Below, one piece after another: positions 35,223 through 44,640 of a DNA stretch of 56,530 bases. The DNA lies in contig ADNK01000432.1 of the NCBI GenBank assembly GCA_000320545.1, forward strand, positions 1 to 56,530. The letters are read 5' to 3'. The notes under the pieces were generated by a model, which saw only the letters and a program-made list of their open reading frames with translations, made no database searches and was not told the DNA's origin. Made by a program: the position numbers and the translations under genes. The stretch comes from Bigelowiella natans CCMP2755 (Eukaryota; Protista; Cercozoa). Positions within the stretch are counted from its first letter, which is position 1. Each line of letters begins with the position of its first letter.

Positions 35223-37114
35223 ATGCGCTTCACAGCTGCCCTCCTCCTACCCGCCCTTGTCTCAGCTCATGGCCATGCCAAGCACGACGCTGTCCGTCGC
35301 GCGGAAATTGAGCGCCTCAATGCTCTTCCTGGAATGACCTGGACGGCAGGAATCAGTGATCGTTTCCGTGGGCAGCCCCTCAACGCCTCAAAATCCCTCT
35401 GCGGTAATAGATTTTTTACTACATCTTGCCCATTGATCTAAGGCGTGTCGTACATAGGTGTGAAGCCCGGAAATCTTGAACGTATGAAGGCTGCCATCCG
35501 CCACGGAGAGATCAAGGTGGTTGACGCTAAGATGCTTGGGGCCACAGATATTCCTACCGAGTTCGACAGTGAGACCAACTGGCCTGAGTGCGCAAAGGTG
35601 ATTTTTTAGAAGGAGGAGGAGGAGGAGGAGAAGAAGAAGAAGAAGAAGCAACGACCTCCCTTCTATTTTATCTCACAAGAGATTAACATAAGTAATTAGT
35701 TGCCCTTAACCTGGCCACATCACGTAATCACGTAAAAGATTGCATTCTGCCCCTCTGATTTCTGTTGTCTACGTGCATGTGAACAGGTCATCGGTGATAT
35801 CCGCGACCAGAGCAACTGCGGCTGCTGCTGGGCATTCGGTGCTGCTGAAGCTGCTTCTGACCGTCTCTGCATCGCCACTGGTGGTAAGGTCGCTGTTCCG
35901 CTTTCCTCCCAAGAAATGTGCTTCTGCGCCGAATCTGACGGGTGCGGAGGCGGCTTCCTCAGCCTTGCGTGGAGCTACATTGGTCGTACTGGACTCGTAA
36001 CTGGAGGTCAGTACAAAGGCCAGGGACCCTTCGGCACCGACTCTGGGTTCTGCTCATCCTTCTCCCTCCCCCACTGCCACCACCACGGTCCTCAGGGCAG
36101 CGATCCATACCCTGCTGAAGGAGCTCCTGGCTGCCCTTCGGAGAGCTCTCCAGCTTGCCCAACCCAGTGCGACAGCGGCGCCAAGAGTCCTTACAACGAC
36201 TTCCAGAAGTCCCGCTACACCTTCACTGGAGGGCAGGAGACCTACGAGAATGCTGAGGCTCTGCAGGCAGCGATCATGGCTCACGGGCCTGTAGAAACTG
36301 CCTTCACTGTGTACTCCGACTTCGAGAACTACGTGTCTGGTATCTACCAGAAGACTTCTTCCTCAGTCCTCGGCGGTCATGCTGTGCGAATTGTCGGATG
36401 GGGCGAGGAGAACGGCGTCAAGTACTGGAAGGTGGCTAACAGCTGGAACCCTTACTGGGGTGAGAAGGGCTACTTCCGTATTATCCGAGGACAGGACGAG
36501 TGCGGTATTGAGAGCCAGGCAATGGCATCTTCCGCATCGGCTAAGTGGAGCGGTCCTGGTGTCAATGACAAGCAAGATGTTGCCGTCACTGCCGCCCTCG
36601 ACCAGGAATTTCTTCAGGTATTAACAGGGCTAAGGCGAGTGGGGGGATGGTTAGTTGAATAAGGATTACGAGACTGCAGCCGTTGTGTGTTAGTTGGTAT
36701 CTTGTGGTATTATCGTCACATCGCCTGTCTGTAGATCAGCCAGCTGCACAACCCCCCCCCCTCACACGCACATGCACACGCCCCTTACTCTCAATTTTCT
36801 GTCATCAGGATTACTTGAACGCCACTACACACTACGGCGACCCAAAGCAGGGCTGCGAGTCCGATGAGAAGGCCGTGCAGATCCAGGGTATCTCCGGAGA
36901 CTTCTGCACCCCTCCCTGCTCATCCGCCTCCGCCTGCCCAACCGACGTGCCAGAGGGAGTCACTGCTAAGCCACAGTGTGCACTCGACGATGGACAAGGG
37001 GATAAGTACTGCGCTCTTATTTGCCAGCCTTCCTCGAAGAACGACGACCAGTGTGGCGCCAACGCTTCCTGCAAGGCTATCAGCGGAGTTGGAATCTGCA
37101 CCTACGATGACTAA
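35223..37114 (+). CDS. CTSB: Cathepsin B-like cysteine protease (C1A) with C-terminal Cys-rich extension
   Basis: Exons 35223-35403, 35458-35597, 35787-36617 and 36809-37114. Signal peptide, IRDQSNCGCCWAFG (catalytic Cys), occluding loop CHHHG, and GGHAVRIVGWG...YWKVANSWN. Confidence 0.95.
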
Positions 37115-37562: not shown

Positions 37563-37911
37563 TATTACATCTAGACATATGCATACTTATATTTCTTGTA
37601 CCGTCGCCGCAAGTATCTAGTATAAGCAACTTTTCTAGCGTTATCATTTGTTGCGAAACGAATGAAGGCTTGCAGATACTTGTGGAGGAATCAAGCCAGC
37701 CAGTGTCACGATATGCATGACCAACAACATAAGAGCATCGATGATGAACGTGCTGCAATGGCCGCGCTATGCTAGCTATGGTTGATCGTCGTCGAATGAG
37801 CTGTAACCGCGTCTAAATTTGCAACCATTGCTTACAACTATTGTATAATTGACTAGCAACCAACGCCAGCTTGGGGACTCGATCGACGCTATAACGCCTT
37901 CATTTCATCTT

Positions 37912-38206
37912 TCAATTCTCCTCGAGGAAGAACAATCCATAGCGAATGCCGCCACGAAGTTGGGTGACCTTAGATGCGGGAAGGGAGGACCCAAAAATGC
38001 AAAAACCTATCACTACAAGCTAGCAAGGTACTTAGATTTTACAGCTGATTGATAGATACCCCATGGACGATTCGGTTATCATGGATGGTCGCAGTGCCAG
38101 CACGTCTCAACGGGATTTCGAAGCCCCTCTCCGTCGCAAAAACGAGACGGCCTCCACTGTACTCCTCTGATAAACGCAAAAATTGTATACATATAATGTA
38201 CATGTG

Positions 38207-38251
<45 letters not shown>

Positions 38252-38962
38252 GTTCAGCTGGAGGTTAATGAAGCAAATAGAATATAGTATACATAGAACC
38301 AGCACCATCACCACCTCCCCCCACACACGCCGTATATGCACTGACCGTTCAAAGCGACTTGCATCGTTGCTCTGGAGACGTCCGTGTGGAAATTGATGTG
38401 CTTTCCTATCGCAGCACAGCGCCGAAGGACCACACGGCTAGGTGGACGACCGAACGCGTGCAAACACGCGTTCACGCTCTTCTTACCTGTCGTCATACAC
38501 ATTGGGTATTTACGTGGAATATCAACTTCGGCCAGGGAGAAAGTAGCTAGGAAAAAAAATGGTGGACTGACGCCGACATCTGATTACGAGGCGTTCGCAC
38601 CGATTAGCGTCTCCAGACTCGAGAGCGAAATGTTCATTTTGAGGTCGTCGCGTCCATTCCGCCGCCGCTGCTCTTCTCGCTCCTTCGCCGCCATTTCATG
38701 GTCGACGTAGGCGATTAAATTCTCACACTGGGCCTCATTCAGCAGAGCAATGCCGTACTTAAAGCAGGCTTTAGGCTCTCCGTTCAATTGGCGCGCAATC
38801 GATGATGATGATGATGACGACGACGGCACGACAACGACAGGATCGACCTACACAATATTGACCAATGGTGTTAGTAGAGTTTCGAGCCTAGATTGTTGCC
38901 TCTACTACTCATAATCCGGTGCCTCTGACGGACACATGCAACCGAAGGGCTCATCCGGCGTA

Positions 38963-39008
<46 letters not shown>

Positions 39009-40260
39009 CTGGGATGTACTGTGAAGGCGGTGGAGGCGTGCATCGCCTTCAGTGTCATCATTTATGATATTTTTATCCATCCATCGGAACCTTGCTCAAA
39101 TCTTGGCGACGAGCTCTGAAACTTCCTTCTTCTTCTTCCTTCTGCCGCCGCAGGGTGTAGGCGTCATGAACTAGAAATTCCCTCCCAAGCTGCTGACATT
39201 CGTGTGTAGAAAAGGTCCCAATATCGGCAAATTCAAGCCTACTGTGAAGGATACATGGCCAGAGTAATCATCATCATCATCATCATCATCAATATCATTG
39301 CAATTTTTACCACTACCACCGTCGCCACCAAATAACAAAATTCACGAGGAAGCACACCCTTTAGGAAGATGATGGTTTTTTTTGTTTGTTTTCGATCAAT
39401 ATCTGATTCTCCTATATGCTTTTGCTCTCTTTCCTGTTGCTACGGTACCTACCTCGCCATTATCCGTTGAAAAATCATGCGAAGTACCGGAGAGAATTCA
39501 CGCCAGAACTTTTCTTCACTGTCATGCCCAGCTTCTAAGGTCATTACAATCGACGGCTCTCGCTTTCTAAATCCACCGATATCATCGGCGTCGGAAGGAT
39601 GGCTTATCGTTCGAAAGACCCGGTGCACATGGGCGACTTCAGGAAATGTAACTTTCAATTTAGTTTCGTCAGAGTAGTCGATGGTAGCGGTAGTGGCGGC
39701 GGTGTGGGAAGTCGACGACGAGGAGGAGGAAGAGGAGGAGAGGAAGGGCGGTGAGCGAACGCCAATTGCTTTAAAAATGGATTCATGCATCATCTGGAGC
39801 TGTGACAAATCCTCCTGCAGCACTTTGTGGTAGTCCTAATGTTATTTTGTGTGATGACTCATGTGCATAAGAATGCATATTTCGTGGTGTTTGATAATAT
39901 TAGTTTGTCCATACGCTGTGCTAAGAACTTGATATATATTTTCTCTCATCAGGGAGCAAAGTAGCTTTGTTTCTCTGACCTGCCAGCCAGTCCATCCGAC
40001 AACGCCAAGTCGCTCTCCCTTGGTCAGTTTTTCTCGCAGTGCCTGTGCATTGAGGCATACGGCAGCCCGAACCGGTATTCTTCTGAGCTCTTTCGAGATT
40101 AGCGAGACTTTTTCCGAAGAATGAGAGAACAGGGAAAAGAATGGGTTCCTATTCAGCCACTCTGCAAGTCCAGATGTACCAGGCCCTTTGCAGTCGCCGC
40201 AGATTAAATTCCATAACGAGATCGACTTGGAGAGCGATGACGATGACGATGACGATGATA

Positions 40261-40295
<35 letters not shown>

Positions 40296-40877
40296 AATGA
40301 AGATGCACATGTTGGCTCGGCGCATTGTGTCGTTTCAATCTGGGATATATCGGTGACAAGTATCACAGATTCAAATTCTACATCCAGAAGTCTGCTCATC
40401 ATCGTGGGCGATGATTTGGTGCTGTCAACTCGGAGAAAGTAATGGTCATATTTTGATGATTTATTGATCTCGATGGGTCCTGTGTTCCAAATCACATGAT
40501 TAATCCACTTTTTGTCCTCTGGTAGTTCCTTTGGTGGTTAGAGAAAAGAGAGTTTCTTACATTTTATGTGACAGCGTGCATTACAAGCAGGAAATTCAAT
40601 GGTACTACCTGCTTCATCTTTACATCTGAATCACGCAAAACTGGCTTCCCCCGTCTAACAAATTCCCTCGCGAGCGTTCGCTGTATGTCCCCTTGTGGTC
40701 AGAAAGATCAGCGTTACAATATGATGCAAATTCGCCTTGATATATTGCAGAAATATAACACACCATTTGGGCACACCCACAGAAGTTTTGTCGAATTGTT
40801 TCTCGTCATCTCCATGTCGTCGCGCAGCTGCAAGTCGATTTCCTGGCTTCTTTGTAGCTCACTATATATAATAATAT

Positions 40878-40918
<41 letters not shown>

Positions 40919-41316
40919 ATGTACACAAACTGGTAAAGAAAACGGCATGGTGCTTTTTGCTTATTGTTGTATGATATTATCCAAATGGGTACTAGCTACT
41001 TTGCCTTGCTACTACTGTTGCTTTCATATGTCTCTATTCATTCTAACTTCCTTGTAGAAGAGCAGATCATGGTGCCGATGCAGGGTGCCACAACGCACAG
41101 CTCCCGAGGACTGTCTATTTCACGATTGATATTTGTCTCACGACAACGTGTCAGTGTTGTCGCAGACAAAAATCGTCAATGGATTATCTATCATTTTTCA
41201 TTCAGAGAATTTTCCCCTGCGACAAAGGGAATTGAACAATTTATTTGGTGGTATTCGTTTCCATTACCGGTAGTTCGCTGGCAACGCTCGAGTAACGCTA
41301 CCATGCCCCCCGACAT
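37912..41316 (-). CDS. Fusion protein: degenerate G-alpha-like (pseudo-GTPase) domain + C-terminal 2OG-Fe(II) dioxygenase
   Basis: Phase-consistent exons 40764-40861, 40609-40691, 39980-40528, 39453-39835, 39091-39238, 38601-38847, 38346-38486, 38060-38166 and 37912-37968, plus probable 5' exons up to 41316. Dioxygenase motifs INFHTD, EYSGGRLVF, IHDNRIVHGVT and GIRYGLF are clear. The N-half resembles G-alpha (ELQRSQEIDLQLRDD...KLLW), which is the less certain call. Confidence 0.75.
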
Positions 41317-41508
41317 CCTTCCGTCTCGCGCGCTGCCTCCGAGGTTTCGCTGACCCTCTACTTGGCACTCCTCTTTTGATTATATAAAGATATGTTTATT
41401 TTTCTGTTTAATGTATATTATATTATATATATTTATATACTATACACCTCTGTGATACGTATTCGTACATGTATTTATATTTGTATTTGTATGTATGTGG
41501 CTGTTTCT

Positions 41509-41540
<32 letters not shown>

Positions 41541-41541
41541 T

Positions 41542-41604
<63 letters not shown>

Positions 41605-41751
41605 CGTGTTATCGAAGGCATGGCTTTTAAGTTAAGTGACGAGCTCGGAAGTCAAAATTCTAGGAAAAGTCTACGAACACAATCGCAAAGAAGGTCGTTC
41701 GAAAGTTTCCCCCTGCCATGATTCCGAAAATTCTAATGATGCAATAATTTA

Positions 41752-44640
41752 ATGCAGGCTAGGATGATGCAACAACAGATTCATGGCCAAGGACGAAGCA
41801 ATGAGCGGGGAAGAGCAAGCAACATGGACAGTCAGAATGAGCCTGCTGGAATGATAGGGCGAAAGCCCTCGTATGTTCGCTCCATCCTTCGTTTCCTTGC
41901 TCCGCCTAAAGAACAAGAGACAGTTAAAGTCATCAACGACAAAGAATTAAAAGTCTTACAAAGAGGCACTGAGAAGATAGTCAAGCTCGATCAAATATAT
42001 GGAGAGTCCTCCTCATCGACCAGAGATTTTTTCTCGAAGGAGTTCAAATCGAGTGCCAAACAGTGTCTTAACGGAAGCAACTACGCATTTCTCTTCACCG
42101 GTGAAACCTCCAGTGACAAACTGAGACTCATGTGTGGGGACGAAAAACAAGCTGGAATTGGAGATCTCTTCGTCGATGAGATATTTTCACTTCGAAATGA
42201 TCAGCAAAAGCCCATTGTTACAATGCAGTTCGTCTCGATTGCCGGCGATCTGATTTCAGACCTTGTTAACCCAAAGAACCAGTTTCACATATCAGTAGAT
42301 ATGACCCTGGATGGGGTGATGATACAGCACAATTCTGATGTCAATGTCAGGAACAGAGATGATTTTAGGAGGAGCATGATGGAAGGAATGCGAGTCTTAC
42401 GGGAGAGCCCTGAAAAGGCCGCTTTGAGATCCGTTTTCGTCATATTAGAAATCAGAAACAAAGATCTTTTTAGCAGGGTTATTTTCGCATGCCTGCCTGG
42501 GTTTGAAAGGCTTGGCGTCGACCCTCAGGTGCTGCGCGCACGAGAGGGGCCTATAGCGAACATGGAGCTGTTAGCCTTCGCCGCAGTCCTGAATCGAATG
42601 GCGTTTGCCGACGAAGGGTCTGCATCGTATTGCGACTTCTCCATGTCCAAGACGACTTACTTGCTCGAGGAGGCATTGGGTGGGAATTGTTGTACACTAC
42701 TGATTTCGTCCATAAATACAGGGGCCCGAATGCCGTTGAAGACTCTCGAGATTGCCTCAGCAATACGGCGCGTGGCGAACTACCCCATCCAAAACAACGT
42801 TGCCTCCAACAAGGTTTTCCAGCGGCTGCGCAGAACCATCGCGTACATGAAGCAACGAAATCAAACCGTCAACACAAGTTCACACCTGGGGTCGGACCGG
42901 GATGCGTATGACAGTAAATTGAGCGAGCTAGAGAAGAAGCTAATAGACTCCGAGATTGCCCGGGCTAGCCTGATCGAGGAAAAGAAAGCCACCCTCAAGA
43001 AGTTCCAGGAATTCCGTGACAAGTTCAAGAGCCTCACGGCAGCCAAGGTGAGCGACCAAAAGGCCCTGATTGAGAGCGAGAAGGAGAGGCTGCGAATATC
43101 AAAGCTCCTCGTAGAGCTGAAAATCAACAAGAACCAGAGCTCAGAGAAGACTCTGGAGGAAAAGCACGTGCAGGAAGCGAAGATTCTGGAGCTCGAATCG
43201 GAGATTGCAAAGCTCAAGTCACACTCGAAGCTCGGGGAAGACTCTCAGGAGAAGATTAAGGAGGAGCTCAAGAACAAGATAGACCAGTACGAGAACCTCC
43301 GCGTTGAGTTCGTCTCAGTAAAATACACGCTGATCGAGCTCCAGGAGCAATATGACAAGGTTCGGGATAAGAACAAGAAGATCTCCGCCGAGCTGCTAAC
43401 TCTACACAACACCAACAAATTCCTCCAGAAGTCTAAGGAGGAAGTGGAGAAAAGGGTGAAGGCTTCCGCGGGGATGAACATCGCGGGCAGAAAGGAGGAC
43501 AAAGAGCGAAAAGCTGCAGAGGTAACCAAAGACCACAACGACAAAGAAACCAAAGCTCTCCTGGAGAAGTATGCTGTTGCGAAGGGGGAGGTCGACCGAC
43601 TAAAAAAGAAGCTCCATGACCAATCTTTGGAATATAGACAGAAAATCGAAGAGGGCGTAGTCTCGGGGGGGGCGGGGGAGGACTCCAAGGCGAGCTCTGC
43701 TTTGTCGTTCGCAGCTCTGAACGCGAAGGTGTTCCATGAGCACGTAAGGCAGGAGAGAGGATCGATAGATGAGATCATCGAACAACAGACTAAAATCGAC
43801 GCCCTAGAATCAAACATCTCCAAGCTTATAAAGCATTATCGGATACTCTACGAGTACCTCATGATGTCCTCCTTGCCGGAAGAGGCGTGGCCTGCAGTCT
43901 TGAAGGAGAGGGAGATCGAGCAGCTTCAGAACGCCACCACCACACAGGCCAGCAATGTCGGCGTCTTGAAGACCCTTTTCAACCGGCTACGGGCCCTGCA
44001 AGAATCGATAGTTGAGAGCAACGATAGACAGGTCAAGCTTGTTGAGGAAAATGACCGCTTAAAGAGGGAGGGGCACCGCTCGGACGGCTCCGTCAGCACA
44101 ATACAAAAGCTTCAGGAACATCTGGACAAGATGTTTGCAGAGCAGGTGGCGAAGAGCTCGAAATCGGACAGGCAGAAGATCTTAGACTTGCAAGATGAAA
44201 TTGCAGTCCTAAAGAGCAAAAACCAGAGGCTCGAGCAGCGTTCCCAGGAGGGAGATCCCGACGTCAAAAGGCGCTTGCAAGAGCAGCTATCACAGAAGGA
44301 CGGGGAGATTCGCCGCATGAAAGAAGAATCCATGTCGCTCAGAGAAAAGATTCACGACTTGCAGAAAAAGGCTAAGGCGCCGAAGACTCCGAGAGAAAAG
44401 CAAGATGCAAAGGCCATCAGTAATCAACTGGCAGAGTTCTCCGCAGGGCAAATCCAGCAACTAGAGCGAGAGAATGCCGAACTGAGGACCAAGCTTCTCC
44501 AATGCGAGACAGAGCTCCAAAACTGCGAAGAGTTCATGAAAGAGCAGATTACCTCGTATCAGAATCAAATTATAAGCTTGAAGAAGGAGCTAGCCGCGCT
44601 GAAGCAAACAAATAGCTCACAGCCACGAGCAGCATGGTGA
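41752..44640 (+). CDS. Intronless 962-aa protein: degenerate kinesin motor domain + CCDC78/DUF4472-like coiled coil
   Basis: Kinesin-like segments LNGSNYAFLFTGETSSDK (P-loop degenerate), SRVIFACLPGFER (DLAGSER degenerate) and SKTTYLLEEALGGNCCTLLI. LIESEKERLRISKLLVELKINKN...EAKILELE resembles the CCDC78 DUF4472 region. Long coiled coil. Confidence 0.85.
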   Translation: MQARMMQQQIHGQGRSNERGRASNMDSQNEPAGMIGRKPSYVRSILRFLAPPKEQETVKVINDKELKVLQRGTEKIVKLDQIYGESSSSTRDFFSKEFKSSAKQCLNGSNYAFLFTGETSSDKLRLMCGDEKQAGIGDLFVDEIFSLRNDQQKPIVTMQFVSIAGDLISDLVNPKNQFHISVDMTLDGVMIQHNSDVNVRNRDDFRRSMMEGMRVLRESPEKAALRSVFVILEIRNKDLFSRVIFACLPGFERLGVDPQVLRAREGPIANMELLAFAAVLNRMAFADEGSASYCDFSMSKTTYLLEEALGGNCCTLLISSINTGARMPLKTLEIASAIRRVANYPIQNNVASNKVFQRLRRTIAYMKQRNQTVNTSSHLGSDRDAYDSKLSELEKKLIDSEIARASLIEEKKATLKKFQEFRDKFKSLTAAKVSDQKALIESEKERLRISKLLVELKINKNQSSEKTLEEKHVQEAKILELESEIAKLKSHSKLGEDSQEKIKEELKNKIDQYENLRVEFVSVKYTLIELQEQYDKVRDKNKKISAELLTLHNTNKFLQKSKEEVEKRVKASAGMNIAGRKEDKERKAAEVTKDHNDKETKALLEKYAVAKGEVDRLKKKLHDQSLEYRQKIEEGVVSGGAGEDSKASSALSFAALNAKVFHEHVRQERGSIDEIIEQQTKIDALESNISKLIKHYRILYEYLMMSSLPEEAWPAVLKEREIEQLQNATTTQASNVGVLKTLFNRLRALQESIVESNDRQVKLVEENDRLKREGHRSDGSVSTIQKLQEHLDKMFAEQVAKSSKSDRQKILDLQDEIAVLKSKNQRLEQRSQEGDPDVKRRLQEQLSQKDGEIRRMKEESMSLREKIHDLQKKAKAPKTPREKQDAKAISNQLAEFSAGQIQQLERENAELRTKLLQCETELQNCEEFMKEQITSYQNQIISLKKELAALKQTNSSQPRAAW

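What the first reader, a model, noticed from the sequence alone, without database searches (positions are those of the whole stretch)
37912..41316. Pseudo-G-alpha domain fused in frame to an intact 2OG-Fe(II) dioxygenase
Seen: nine consecutive exons with canonical GT-AG ends and matching phases form one ORF. The N-half follows the heterotrimeric G-alpha Ras-like domain motif by motif. N-helix ELQRSQEIDLQLRDD matches (RS.EID.QL..D). KLLWVCPNGDIQRTLAREF sits at the G1 P-loop position (canonical KLLLLGAGESGKSTIVKQM), NTGPIEI at switch I (TTGIVE) and FLRVDSTKS at G3 (FRMFDVGGQ). Then FESVILVTDISQIE (AIIFVVALSEYD), LSKSISLWNLICG (RMHESLKLFDSICN), AVCLNAQALREKL at G4 (LFLNKKDLFEEKI), GWTGWQDY (EYTGPNTY), and a terminal helix FWREFSPVLRMIFQRIM. 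Every nucleotide-binding motif is degenerate, and G1 to switch I is only ~35 aa, so the alpha-helical domain is missing. The C-half keeps the HxD...H iron triad (FHTD, IVHG) and the 2OG-binding Arg (GIRY). Inference: a catalytically dead G-alpha scaffold carrying an O2/2OG-dependent hydroxylase, which could link G-beta-gamma or receptor complexes to protein hydroxylation or oxygen sensing. I know of no described protein with this architecture.
Basis: partly seen in the sequence, partly recalled or inferred. Interest (0 to 1): 0.85.

Follow-up and report, generated by a model that had tools for sequence, protein, structure and literature searches.

The report
Orphan region fused to hydroxylase-like enzyme
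This is one real spliced gene of the alga Bigelowiella natans: its back third is a prolyl-hydroxylase-type iron/2-oxoglutarate enzyme domain, and its front two thirds have no detectable relatives and cannot be shown to be a dead G-protein alpha subunit.

Summary
The gene is real. Eleven GT-AG exons, not nine, on the minus strand (41316..37912) encode a 643-aa protein. Each exon checked translates to an exact stretch of JGI Bigelowiella natans model 85969 (P0001).

The C-terminal claim holds. Residues 412-643 give a confident AF2 model (pLDDT mostly above 90 from about residue 470). It superposes on prolyl 4-hydroxylases, PHD2 and ALKBH7 at Z 12-13.6. H576, H624 and R634 are invariant and D578 nearly so in about 20 protist homologues. 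Those homologues usually carry a ubiquitin-like domain where this protein has its N-half.

The pseudo-G-alpha claim does not hold up:
- Residues 1-411 have no homologue in 1.84 billion representative proteins, no Pfam hit, and no PF00503 hit in a six-frame search that found over 30 true G-alpha loci in the same genome.
- hhalign probability is at most 1%, and different methods pick different alignment registers.
- None of five G-box patterns tested is present.
- Pairwise alignments against true G-alphas score like shuffled sequence, and a chain test on objectively chosen blocks gives p about 0.08.
- AF2 gives no usable fold for the N-half, so structure cannot settle it.

Verdict: a lineage-specific orphan N-terminal region on a P4H-like oxygenase. 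Interest is low to moderate.

The parts
41268..41316 (-). Coding exon 1 (ATG at 41316; residues 1-16, phase 1 at the donor)
   Evidence: Translation is an exact substring of P0001, residues 1-16. The donor is GTAATG.
41048..41114 (-). Coding exon 2 (67 nt; residues 17-39).
   Evidence: The core SPRELCVVAPCIGTMICSSTR was located at 41112-41050, with an AG acceptor and a GTTAGA donor. It matches P0001.
40764..40861 (-).
40609..40691 (-). Coding exon 4 (residues 72-99)
39980..40528 (-). Coding exon 5 (residues 100-282), the core of the orphan N-half. It includes two poly-Ser runs, at residues 178-188 and 190-197.
   Evidence: phmmer against 1.84 billion representatives found one other hit, a weak unrelated repeat protein at E 8.7e-4. 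There is no Pfam or PDB hit. AF2 on this exon alone gave pLDDT 32.
39453..39835 (-). Coding exon 6 (residues 283-410), the end of the orphan N-half. It has a Ser/Thr run at residues 315-325.
   Evidence: Reading through the donor stops at once, giving ...IMAR* (ORF 39449..39823).
39091..39241 (-). Coding exon 7 (residues 410-460). The conserved oxygenase-family domain starts here, at the motif DIGTF around residues 417-421.
   Evidence: Alignment A1 shows that the family domain begins at 'DIGxFG'. The exon has no Met, and in-frame TGA codons lie just upstream in the intron (sequence read).
38601..38847 (-). Coding exon 8 (residues 461-543), the N-terminal alpha/beta part of the oxygenase domain
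38346..38486 (-). Coding exon 9 (residues 543-590), holding H576 (38388-38386) and D578 (38382-38380) of the HxD iron motif
   Evidence: H576 is invariant and D578 is at least 90% conserved in A1. Coordinates were read.
38060..38166 (-). Coding exon 10 (residues 590-625), holding the distal His, H624 (38065-38063)
   Evidence: H624 is invariant in A1 and A2. This stretch lies in the beta-helix core of the AF2 model, at pLDDT above 90.
37912..37968 (-). Coding exon 11 (residues 626-643 plus the TGA stop), holding R634 (37944-37942), the predicted 2OG-binding Arg
   Evidence: R634 is invariant in A1. It lies 10 residues after the distal His, as in PHD- and PiuC-type enzymes.

Best explanation
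This is one nuclear gene of Bigelowiella natans (JGI Bigna1 85969). It has 11 exons and encodes a 643-aa two-part protein.

The C-terminal part, residues 412-643, is a prolyl-4-hydroxylase/PHD-type Fe(II)/2-oxoglutarate oxygenase domain with an intact H576-x-D578...H624...R634 site. It belongs to a protist family that Pfam does not recognise. In that family the domain begins at a 'DIGxFG' motif. It is normally fused to a ubiquitin-like domain, and in some members to U-box, SAM, CCCH zinc-finger or GRDP-like modules.

The N-terminal part, residues 1-411, sits where the ubiquitin-like module usually is. It is a Ser-rich, lineage-specific sequence with no detectable relatives and no predictable fold.

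Inferred mechanism: the C-domain binds Fe(II) and 2OG and hydroxylates a protein side chain, most likely proline by analogy with its nearest structural neighbours. The orphan N-region gives localisation or partner and substrate selection.

Shown here: the gene structure, the domain boundary, the fold and the conserved catalytic residues. Inferred only: activity, substrate and the role of the N-half.
For: Gene:
- All introns are GT-AG and the phases match.
- Exon translations are exact substrings of P0001. P0001 is an EST-extended JGI model.
- Seventeen runs from five studies hold 0.41-0.50 of the locus's 31-mers. The share expected if all exons and no introns are present is 0.45-0.50.

Single gene:
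- The conserved domain starts at the first residues of exon 7.
- Exon 7 has no Met and has in-frame stops just upstream.

C-domain:
- AF2 pLDDT is mostly above 90 from about residue 470 to 643.
- Foldseek gives E 5e-8 and probability 1.0 to PPHD, PiuC, PHD2 and DdPhyA.
- VIA-align gives Z 13.6 at rmsd 2.4 A over 143 residues to algal P4H 3gze, and Z 13.4 to PHD2.
- H576, H624 and R634 are invariant and D578 is at least 90% conserved in 20 sequences.
- There is a paralogue with a UBL domain on contig C3295, and protist homologues at 45-49% identity.
- One family member hits PF13640 at 7.5e-4.

N-half is an orphan:
- There are no relatives in the 1.84-billion or the 5.8-billion protein libraries.
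- There is no paralogue in the own genome.
- There are no Pfam or PDB hits.
Against: - P0001 itself reaches no Pfam 2OG model even at E <= 10.
- A family profile reaches PDB oxygenases only at E 0.3-0.9. The oxygenase assignment therefore rests on predicted structure plus motif conservation, not on sequence statistics.
- Several tests of the N-half against G-alpha fall in the upper tail: HMMER P = 0.013, hhalign local score reached by 2 of 100 shuffles, and 0 of 28 natural controls reaching the block-chain score. A very eroded G-alpha origin is therefore not excluded.
Confidence: 0.75

Rival explanations
1. Residues about 40-411 are a degenerate G-alpha Ras-like domain that has lost the helical domain and every nucleotide-binding motif. 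It would act as a pseudo-GTPase scaffold carrying a hydroxylase.
For: - The genome holds more than 30 PF00503 loci. Earlier notes of this scan report G-alpha fusions and degenerate G-alphas in the same genome.
Shuffles give 66 +/- 8.7 (0 of 300 reach 108), and natural controls give 52-80.
- Weak upper-tail signals come from unbiased tests: HMMER P = 0.013, hhalign local score 21.3 against 14.7 +/- 2.3, and block chain 55.0 against a natural maximum of 54.6.
- There are short local patches: EDKKWI...S.YD resembles switch II and beta4, and DYHKVLQED...MHES resembles the start of alpha3.
Against: - The motif set was chosen after seeing the sequence.
- PF00503 finds nothing in this contig at E <= 10, yet it finds degenerate G-alphas elsewhere in the genome, for example C1231 at E 1.8e-9.
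- hmmscan of the whole protein lists no GTPase family.
- hhalign probability is 1% and 0.4%. The same G-alpha motif, S.YD..L, is 'matched' by two different places in the protein.
- Pairwise alignment gives z between -0.4 and 0.7.
- No G1, G3, G4, G5 or switch I pattern is present.
- The N-half has no paralogue link to any G-alpha locus.
Confidence: 0.09
2. The N-half is some other eroded alpha/beta nucleotide-binding-type domain, Rossmann-like or RecA-like, interrupted by low-complexity Ser runs. It would be neither G-alpha nor a purely disordered linker.
For: - The protein-language-model neighbours of residues 38-411 are all NAD(P)-binding Rossmann families, at score 0.77-0.79.
- The Atlas's own low-confidence model is nearest to helicase RecA-like domains, at TM about 0.3.
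- Short hydrophobic beta-like stretches (KLLWVC, HYFLRV, SVILVTD, AAVCLNA) alternate with predicted helices.
Against: - Atlas scores under 0.9 are leads only, and a third of shuffled proteins reach 0.8.
- There is no Pfam hit.
- AF2 pLDDT is below 50 throughout and the whole-protein model has no strands in the N-half. The exon-5 model alone has pLDDT 32.
Confidence: 0.1
3. The fusion is a gene-model artefact. Two adjacent genes, an N-half gene ending at ...IMAR* by reading into the intron at 39452 and a separate oxygenase gene, would have been merged.
For: - Reading through the exon-6 donor gives an immediate stop.
- No junction-spanning reads could be examined.
- No exactly matching transcript-derived protein is on record.
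Against: - Exon 7 opens exactly at the start of the conserved family domain. It has no Met and is preceded by in-frame TGA codons.
- The first Met downstream (in ...VDHEMAAKE..., exon 8) lies about 95 residues inside the conserved domain.
- The donor and acceptor are canonical and in phase.
- The JGI model is EST-extended.
- The word share of 0.41-0.50 fits all exons being present. The C-half alone would give about 0.15 and the N-half alone about 0.29 (my arithmetic from the exon lengths, compared).
Confidence: 0.05

Closest known systems
Prolyl 4-hydroxylase / PHD-type 2OG-Fe(II) oxygenases (Chlamydomonas P4H-1 3gze, human PHD2, Pseudomonas PPHD 4iw3/4j25, Dictyostelium PhyA 6t8m, PiuC/YbiX 9qn0)
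   Same: - The predicted double-stranded beta-helix fold matches at Z 12-13.6 and rmsd 2.3-3.0 A over 140-150 residues.
- The HxD...H iron triad is present, with an Arg 10 residues after the distal His.
   Different: - Sequence identity is only 14-16%.
- P0001 gets no Pfam 2OG hit.
- The loop between HxD and the following strand is unusually short (FHTDVSRATMQV).
- There is a family-specific N-terminal extension of about 70 residues starting at 'DIGxFG'.
- Substrate and activity are unknown.
Unannotated protist 'UBL + DIGxFG + oxygenase' family (B. natans paralogue on contig C3295; Halteria grandinella hypothetical proteins FGO68_gene2106 and gene10409; P0003-P0020)
   Same: - The C-domain is 42-49% identical to the closest members.
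- It has the same invariant residues and the same domain start.
   Different: The relatives carry ubiquitin-like, U-box, SAM, CCCH or GRDP-like (PF07173) modules. This protein instead has a unique 411-aa N-region with no UBL signal (hhalign probability 1.4%).
Heterotrimeric G-protein alpha subunit (Pfam PF00503)
   Same: Only short, individually non-significant string resemblances to conserved G-alpha motifs.
   Different: - There is no profile match, none of the five G-box patterns tested, and no helical domain.
- Alignment registers are inconsistent.
- There is no paralogue link to the genome's more than 30 true G-alpha loci.

Membership tests
G-alpha (PF00503) | Significant match to the family profile | tested here: not met
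   - The six-frame PF00503 search of the whole genome at E <= 10 gave 121 matches, none in contig C3305. A loose first-look filter applies to that search.
- hmmscan of P0001 at E <= 10 lists no GTPase family.
- A profile of 26 own-genome G-alpha sequences gives 0.3 bits. hhalign probability is 0.4-1%.
G-alpha (PF00503) | G1 P-loop GxxxxGK[ST], G3 DxxGQ, G4 [NT]KxD, G5 TCA[TV] | tested here: not met
A regex scan of residues 1-411 finds none of them. G1, G3 and G4 are found in the true G-alphas L001 and L003 of the same genome.
G-alpha (PF00503) | All-helical domain inserted between G1 and switch I | tested here: not met
   Only about 35-50 residues separate the claimed G1 (residue 64) and switch I (residue 114) positions.
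G-alpha (PF00503) | Ras-like alpha/beta fold | tested here: inconclusive
   In the whole-protein AF2 model, pLDDT is below 50 over residues 55-281 and 307-389. Exon 5 modelled alone gives pLDDT 32. No homologues exist to build an alignment.
G-alpha (PF00503) | GTP binding and G-beta-gamma binding | not testable with these tools
   This needs biochemistry.
2OG-Fe(II) oxygenase, P4H/PHD type | Double-stranded beta-helix fold | tested here: met
   The AF2 model has pLDDT mostly above 90 from about residue 470. Foldseek gives E 5e-8 and probability 1.0. VIA-align gives Z 13.6 to 3gze and 13.4 to PHD2.
2OG-Fe(II) oxygenase, P4H/PHD type | HxD/E...H iron-binding triad | tested here: met
   H576 and H624 are invariant. 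D578 is conserved in at least 90% of the 20 family sequences, and one member has E there.
2OG-Fe(II) oxygenase, P4H/PHD type | Basic residue binding the 2OG C5 carboxylate about 10 residues after the distal His | tested here: met
   R634 is invariant and lies at +10 from H624. That it occupies the equivalent position in 3D was not checked at the coordinate level.
2OG-Fe(II) oxygenase, P4H/PHD type | Match to a curated sequence profile (PF13640 or a relative) | tested here: not met
   P0001 has no hit at E <= 10 and none in the exon-by-exon search. One family member reaches PF13640 at 7.5e-4. The family profile against PDB reaches only EctD at E 0.3 and PLOD at E 0.9.
2OG-Fe(II) oxygenase, P4H/PHD type | Fe(II)- and 2OG-dependent turnover | not testable with these tools
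   This needs an enzyme assay.

The most novel reading that the evidence does not exclude
The N-half is a genuine but extremely eroded G-alpha Ras-like relic, derived from the large lineage-specific G-alpha expansion of Bigelowiella. The protein would then be a pseudo-GTPase scaffold joined to a protein hydroxylase, an architecture I did not find described. The faint upper-tail signals and the post-hoc motif chain do not exclude this.
Probability: 0.08. Interest if true: 0.75.

Novelty: new member of a known kind. Interest (0 to 1): 0.25.

Why it matters
The evidence does not carry that.

What remains is more modest. A P4H-like oxygenase family in protists goes unrecognised by Pfam. It is habitually joined to ubiquitin-like and other signalling modules, and this Bigelowiella copy has swapped that module for a species-specific orphan sequence. 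The family could be worth a proper description, covering substrate and any link to ubiquitin signalling. The individual gene is an ordinary lineage-specific domain fusion.

Tried and rejected
- **Read laying.** No letters of 40861-40930 were sent to any search tool afterwards, and exon 3 was searched from 40860.
- **Exon-by-exon searches.** Pfam, PDB phmmer and Atlas features for exon 5 gave nothing.
- **Six-frame PF13640 on the genome.** It missed this locus because the domain is split into small exons.
- **The look-up of encoding contigs for P0001.** Nothing is on record.
- **AF2.** The N-half has pLDDT below 50 in the whole protein, and exon 5 alone gives pLDDT 32. I ran no fold search on the exon model, because low-confidence models give meaningless matches.
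- **Hidden ubiquitin-like domain.** I tested for one upstream of DIGTF and rejected it at hhalign probability 1.4%.
- **Family profile against PDB.** The first attempt was swamped by ubiquitin. Without the UBL-rich rows it gave only non-significant oxygenase hits.
- **Literature.** I searched for a UBL, oxygenase or DUF1399 family description and found nothing relevant.
- **Not run.** Complex prediction was not used because no binding claim is made. The metagenome scan was not used because the protein libraries, which include metagenome-derived proteins, already gave no N-half relative.
- **Joined step.** I sent no self-joined spliced model to any search tool. Exons were concatenated only inside scripts, to check phase. 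All whole-protein analyses used the database record P0001 as returned.
Full report
**Observation.** The minus strand between 41316 and 37912 carries a multi-exon gene.

- I located the exon borders in the sequence.
- Nine exons from 40861 to 37912 read as one frame. The ATG exon (41316-41268) is out of phase with them unless a further 67-nt exon (41114-41048) is included. The gene therefore has 11 coding exons, all with GT-AG introns of 72-243 nt.
- A phmmer search with the largest exon (183 aa, by reference) against 1.84 billion representative proteins returned P0001, a 643-aa protein.
- The in-frame translations of ten of the eleven exons, and the core of the 67-nt exon, are exact substrings of P0001.
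- P0001 is Bigelowiella natans JGI model 85969, 'estExt_fgenesh1_pg.C_70142'.
- I did not send a self-joined model to any search tool. Exons were concatenated only inside scripts to check phase. All whole-protein work used P0001 as the tool returned it.

- Indirect evidence remains. Seventeen runs from five studies hold 0.41-0.50 of the sampled 31-mers of 37800-41400.
- The share expected if all 11 exons and no introns are present is 0.45-0.50. By my arithmetic from the exon lengths, either half alone would give about 0.15 or 0.29.
- This fits a fully spliced mRNA holding both halves. It does not prove that they lie on one molecule.

**One gene or two.** The conserved C-terminal domain begins at the first residues of exon 7, at 'ADIGTF'.

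- In about 20 homologues the family domain starts at the same 'DIGxFG' motif.
- Exon 7 has no Met, and in its frame the intron just upstream carries TGA codons.
- The first downstream Met lies about 95 residues inside the conserved domain.
- An independent C-half gene would therefore be truncated, and splicing to upstream coding exons is needed.

**C-half.** No Pfam model hits P0001 even at E <= 10, and the exon-by-exon searches found nothing. Other evidence identifies the domain.

- Residues 412-641 have a paralogue on contig C3295, at 42% identity, that carries a ubiquitin domain.
- Homologues at 45-49% identity exist in other protists, including Halteria grandinella.
- The partner modules vary: ubiquitin-like in 9 of 20 sequences, plus U-box, SAM, CCCH zinc finger and GRDP-like PF07173.
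- H576, H624 and R634 are invariant, and D578 is conserved in at least 90% of sequences.
- With this alignment, AF2 models the C-domain at pLDDT mostly above 90 from about residue 470.
- Foldseek places it with Pseudomonas PPHD, PiuC, PHD2, Dictyostelium PhyA and ALKBH7, at E down to 5e-8 and probability 1.0.
- VIA-align gives Z 13.6 (rmsd 2.4 A, 143 residues) to algal prolyl 4-hydroxylase 3gze and Z 13.4 to PHD2.
- Sequence-only support is weak. One family member hits PF13640 at 7.5e-4. PiuC matches at E 0.7. EctD and PLOD match at E 0.3 and 0.9.

I accept the C-half as an intact P4H/PHD-type 2OG-Fe(II) oxygenase domain of an unannotated family.

**N-half.** Residues 1-411 are an orphan, and the G-alpha reading was tested in four ways.

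*No relatives anywhere.*
- There is no relative in 1.84 billion representatives, apart from one weak hit (E 8.7e-4) to an unrelated repeat protein.
- The 5.8-billion-cluster library also holds none, and neither does the own genome.
- There are no Pfam or PDB hits.
- The region is 16% Ser, with three Ser or Ser/Thr runs.

*Family profiles.*
- PF00503 in six frames finds 121 matches at more than 30 loci of this 91-Mb genome, including degenerate copies, but none in this contig at E <= 10.
- A profile of six own G-alphas gives hhalign probability 1%, pairing residues 103-131 with switch II and beta4.
- A 26-row profile gives probability 0.4%, pairing residues 64-93 with a helical-domain block.
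- HMMER gives 0.3 bits (P = 0.013; 16 of 1000 shuffles reach it), with its only domain at residues 283-334.
- BLAST's best patch pairs residues 284-302 with the start of alpha3.

*Chance controls.*
- Smith-Waterman and low-gap-cost chain alignments to true G-alphas score like shuffles and like unrelated natural proteins, with z between -0.4 and 0.7.
After optimal re-registering they give 108 (0 of 300 shuffles; natural controls 52-80). That motif set was selected after seeing this sequence.
- The nine most conserved blocks of the genome's own G-alphas, chosen objectively, give 55.0 against 43.1 +/- 8.6 (24 of 300 shuffles reach it; natural maximum 54.6).

*Motifs and structure.*
- None of the G1, G3, G4, G5 or switch I patterns tested is present.
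- Structure is uninformative. AF2 pLDDT is below 50 in the whole-protein run and 32 for exon 5 alone.
- The Atlas features point weakly (0.79) to Rossmann-type families, not to G-alpha.
- A hidden ubiquitin-like domain was also tested and rejected.

**Interpretation.** The best reading is a lineage-specific domain fusion. A P4H-like oxygenase domain that normally follows a ubiquitin-like module here follows a unique, Ser-rich region of 411 residues with unknown fold.

- The enzyme probably hydroxylates a protein side chain. This is an inference from its fold neighbours and from the signalling-type partner domains of its relatives.
- The N-region probably supplies targeting or partner binding.
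- The pseudo-G-alpha idea keeps a small residual probability, about 8-9%. Several unbiased statistics fall in the upper tail, and this genome does hold many G-alpha genes and fusions.
- Nothing reaches significance once the post-hoc choice of family and motifs is taken into account.

**Surroundings.**
- The gene is transcribed divergently from a 962-aa coiled-coil protein with weak kinesin-type microtubule-binding and DUF4472 hits (41752-44640, + strand).
- Its 3' end faces a papain-family cysteine protease (35916-36659, + strand).
- Neither neighbour suggests a functional link.

**Novelty and score.** The gene model already exists in JGI without a function.

- The oxygenase assignment is a new member of a known kind.
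- The wider 'UBL + DIGxFG + oxygenase' family seems undescribed in Pfam and in the papers I could search. It is the more interesting by-product.
- Interest is 0.25.

Noticed in passing
L013:1168-2238 (own genome, contig C3295:33159-34229) and proteins P0003-P0020: A protist family of about 230-aa P4H-like oxygenase domains that Pfam does not recognise. The domain starts at a 'DIGxFG' motif placed right where ubiquitin's C-terminal tail would be. Members are fused variously to ubiquitin-like, U-box, SAM, CCCH zinc-finger, PWWP, V-SNARE-N and GRDP-like (PF07173) modules. It may merit description as a family.
   Followed up: partly
own genome, e.g. G000:C1231:22609-23175 (L029): Among more than 30 PF00503 loci, some have a degenerate P-loop (FLVLGNRKNT in place of GAGESGKST) yet still match PF00503 at E 1.8e-9. 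Eroded G-alphas in this genome therefore remain detectable, unlike the N-half studied here.
   Followed up: partly
window 41752-44640 (+): A single 962-aa ORF with a weak kinesin-type 'Microtub_bd' hit (E 8.7e-6, just under the Pfam cut-off), DUF4472 and a long coiled coil. It is transcribed divergently, starting about 430 bp from the gene studied.
   Followed up: partly
window 35916-37114 (+): An exon of a papain-family (C1) cysteine protease (PF00112, E 1.5e-38), followed by a Cys-rich ORF (36683-37114) with no Pfam hit. It converges on the 3' end of the gene studied.
   Followed up: partly
window 38195-38245, 38965-39000, 40862-40930, 41400-41630: Long (TA)n and (CA)n microsatellites sit in several introns and in the 5' intergenic region.
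   Followed up: no
The look-up of sequencing runs row X19: One run labelled as a different organism (organism B) holds 0.33 of the locus's 31-mers. A near-identical copy therefore exists under another species label; the cause (for example a relabelled strain, a close relative or a mixed culture) was not looked into.
   Followed up: no
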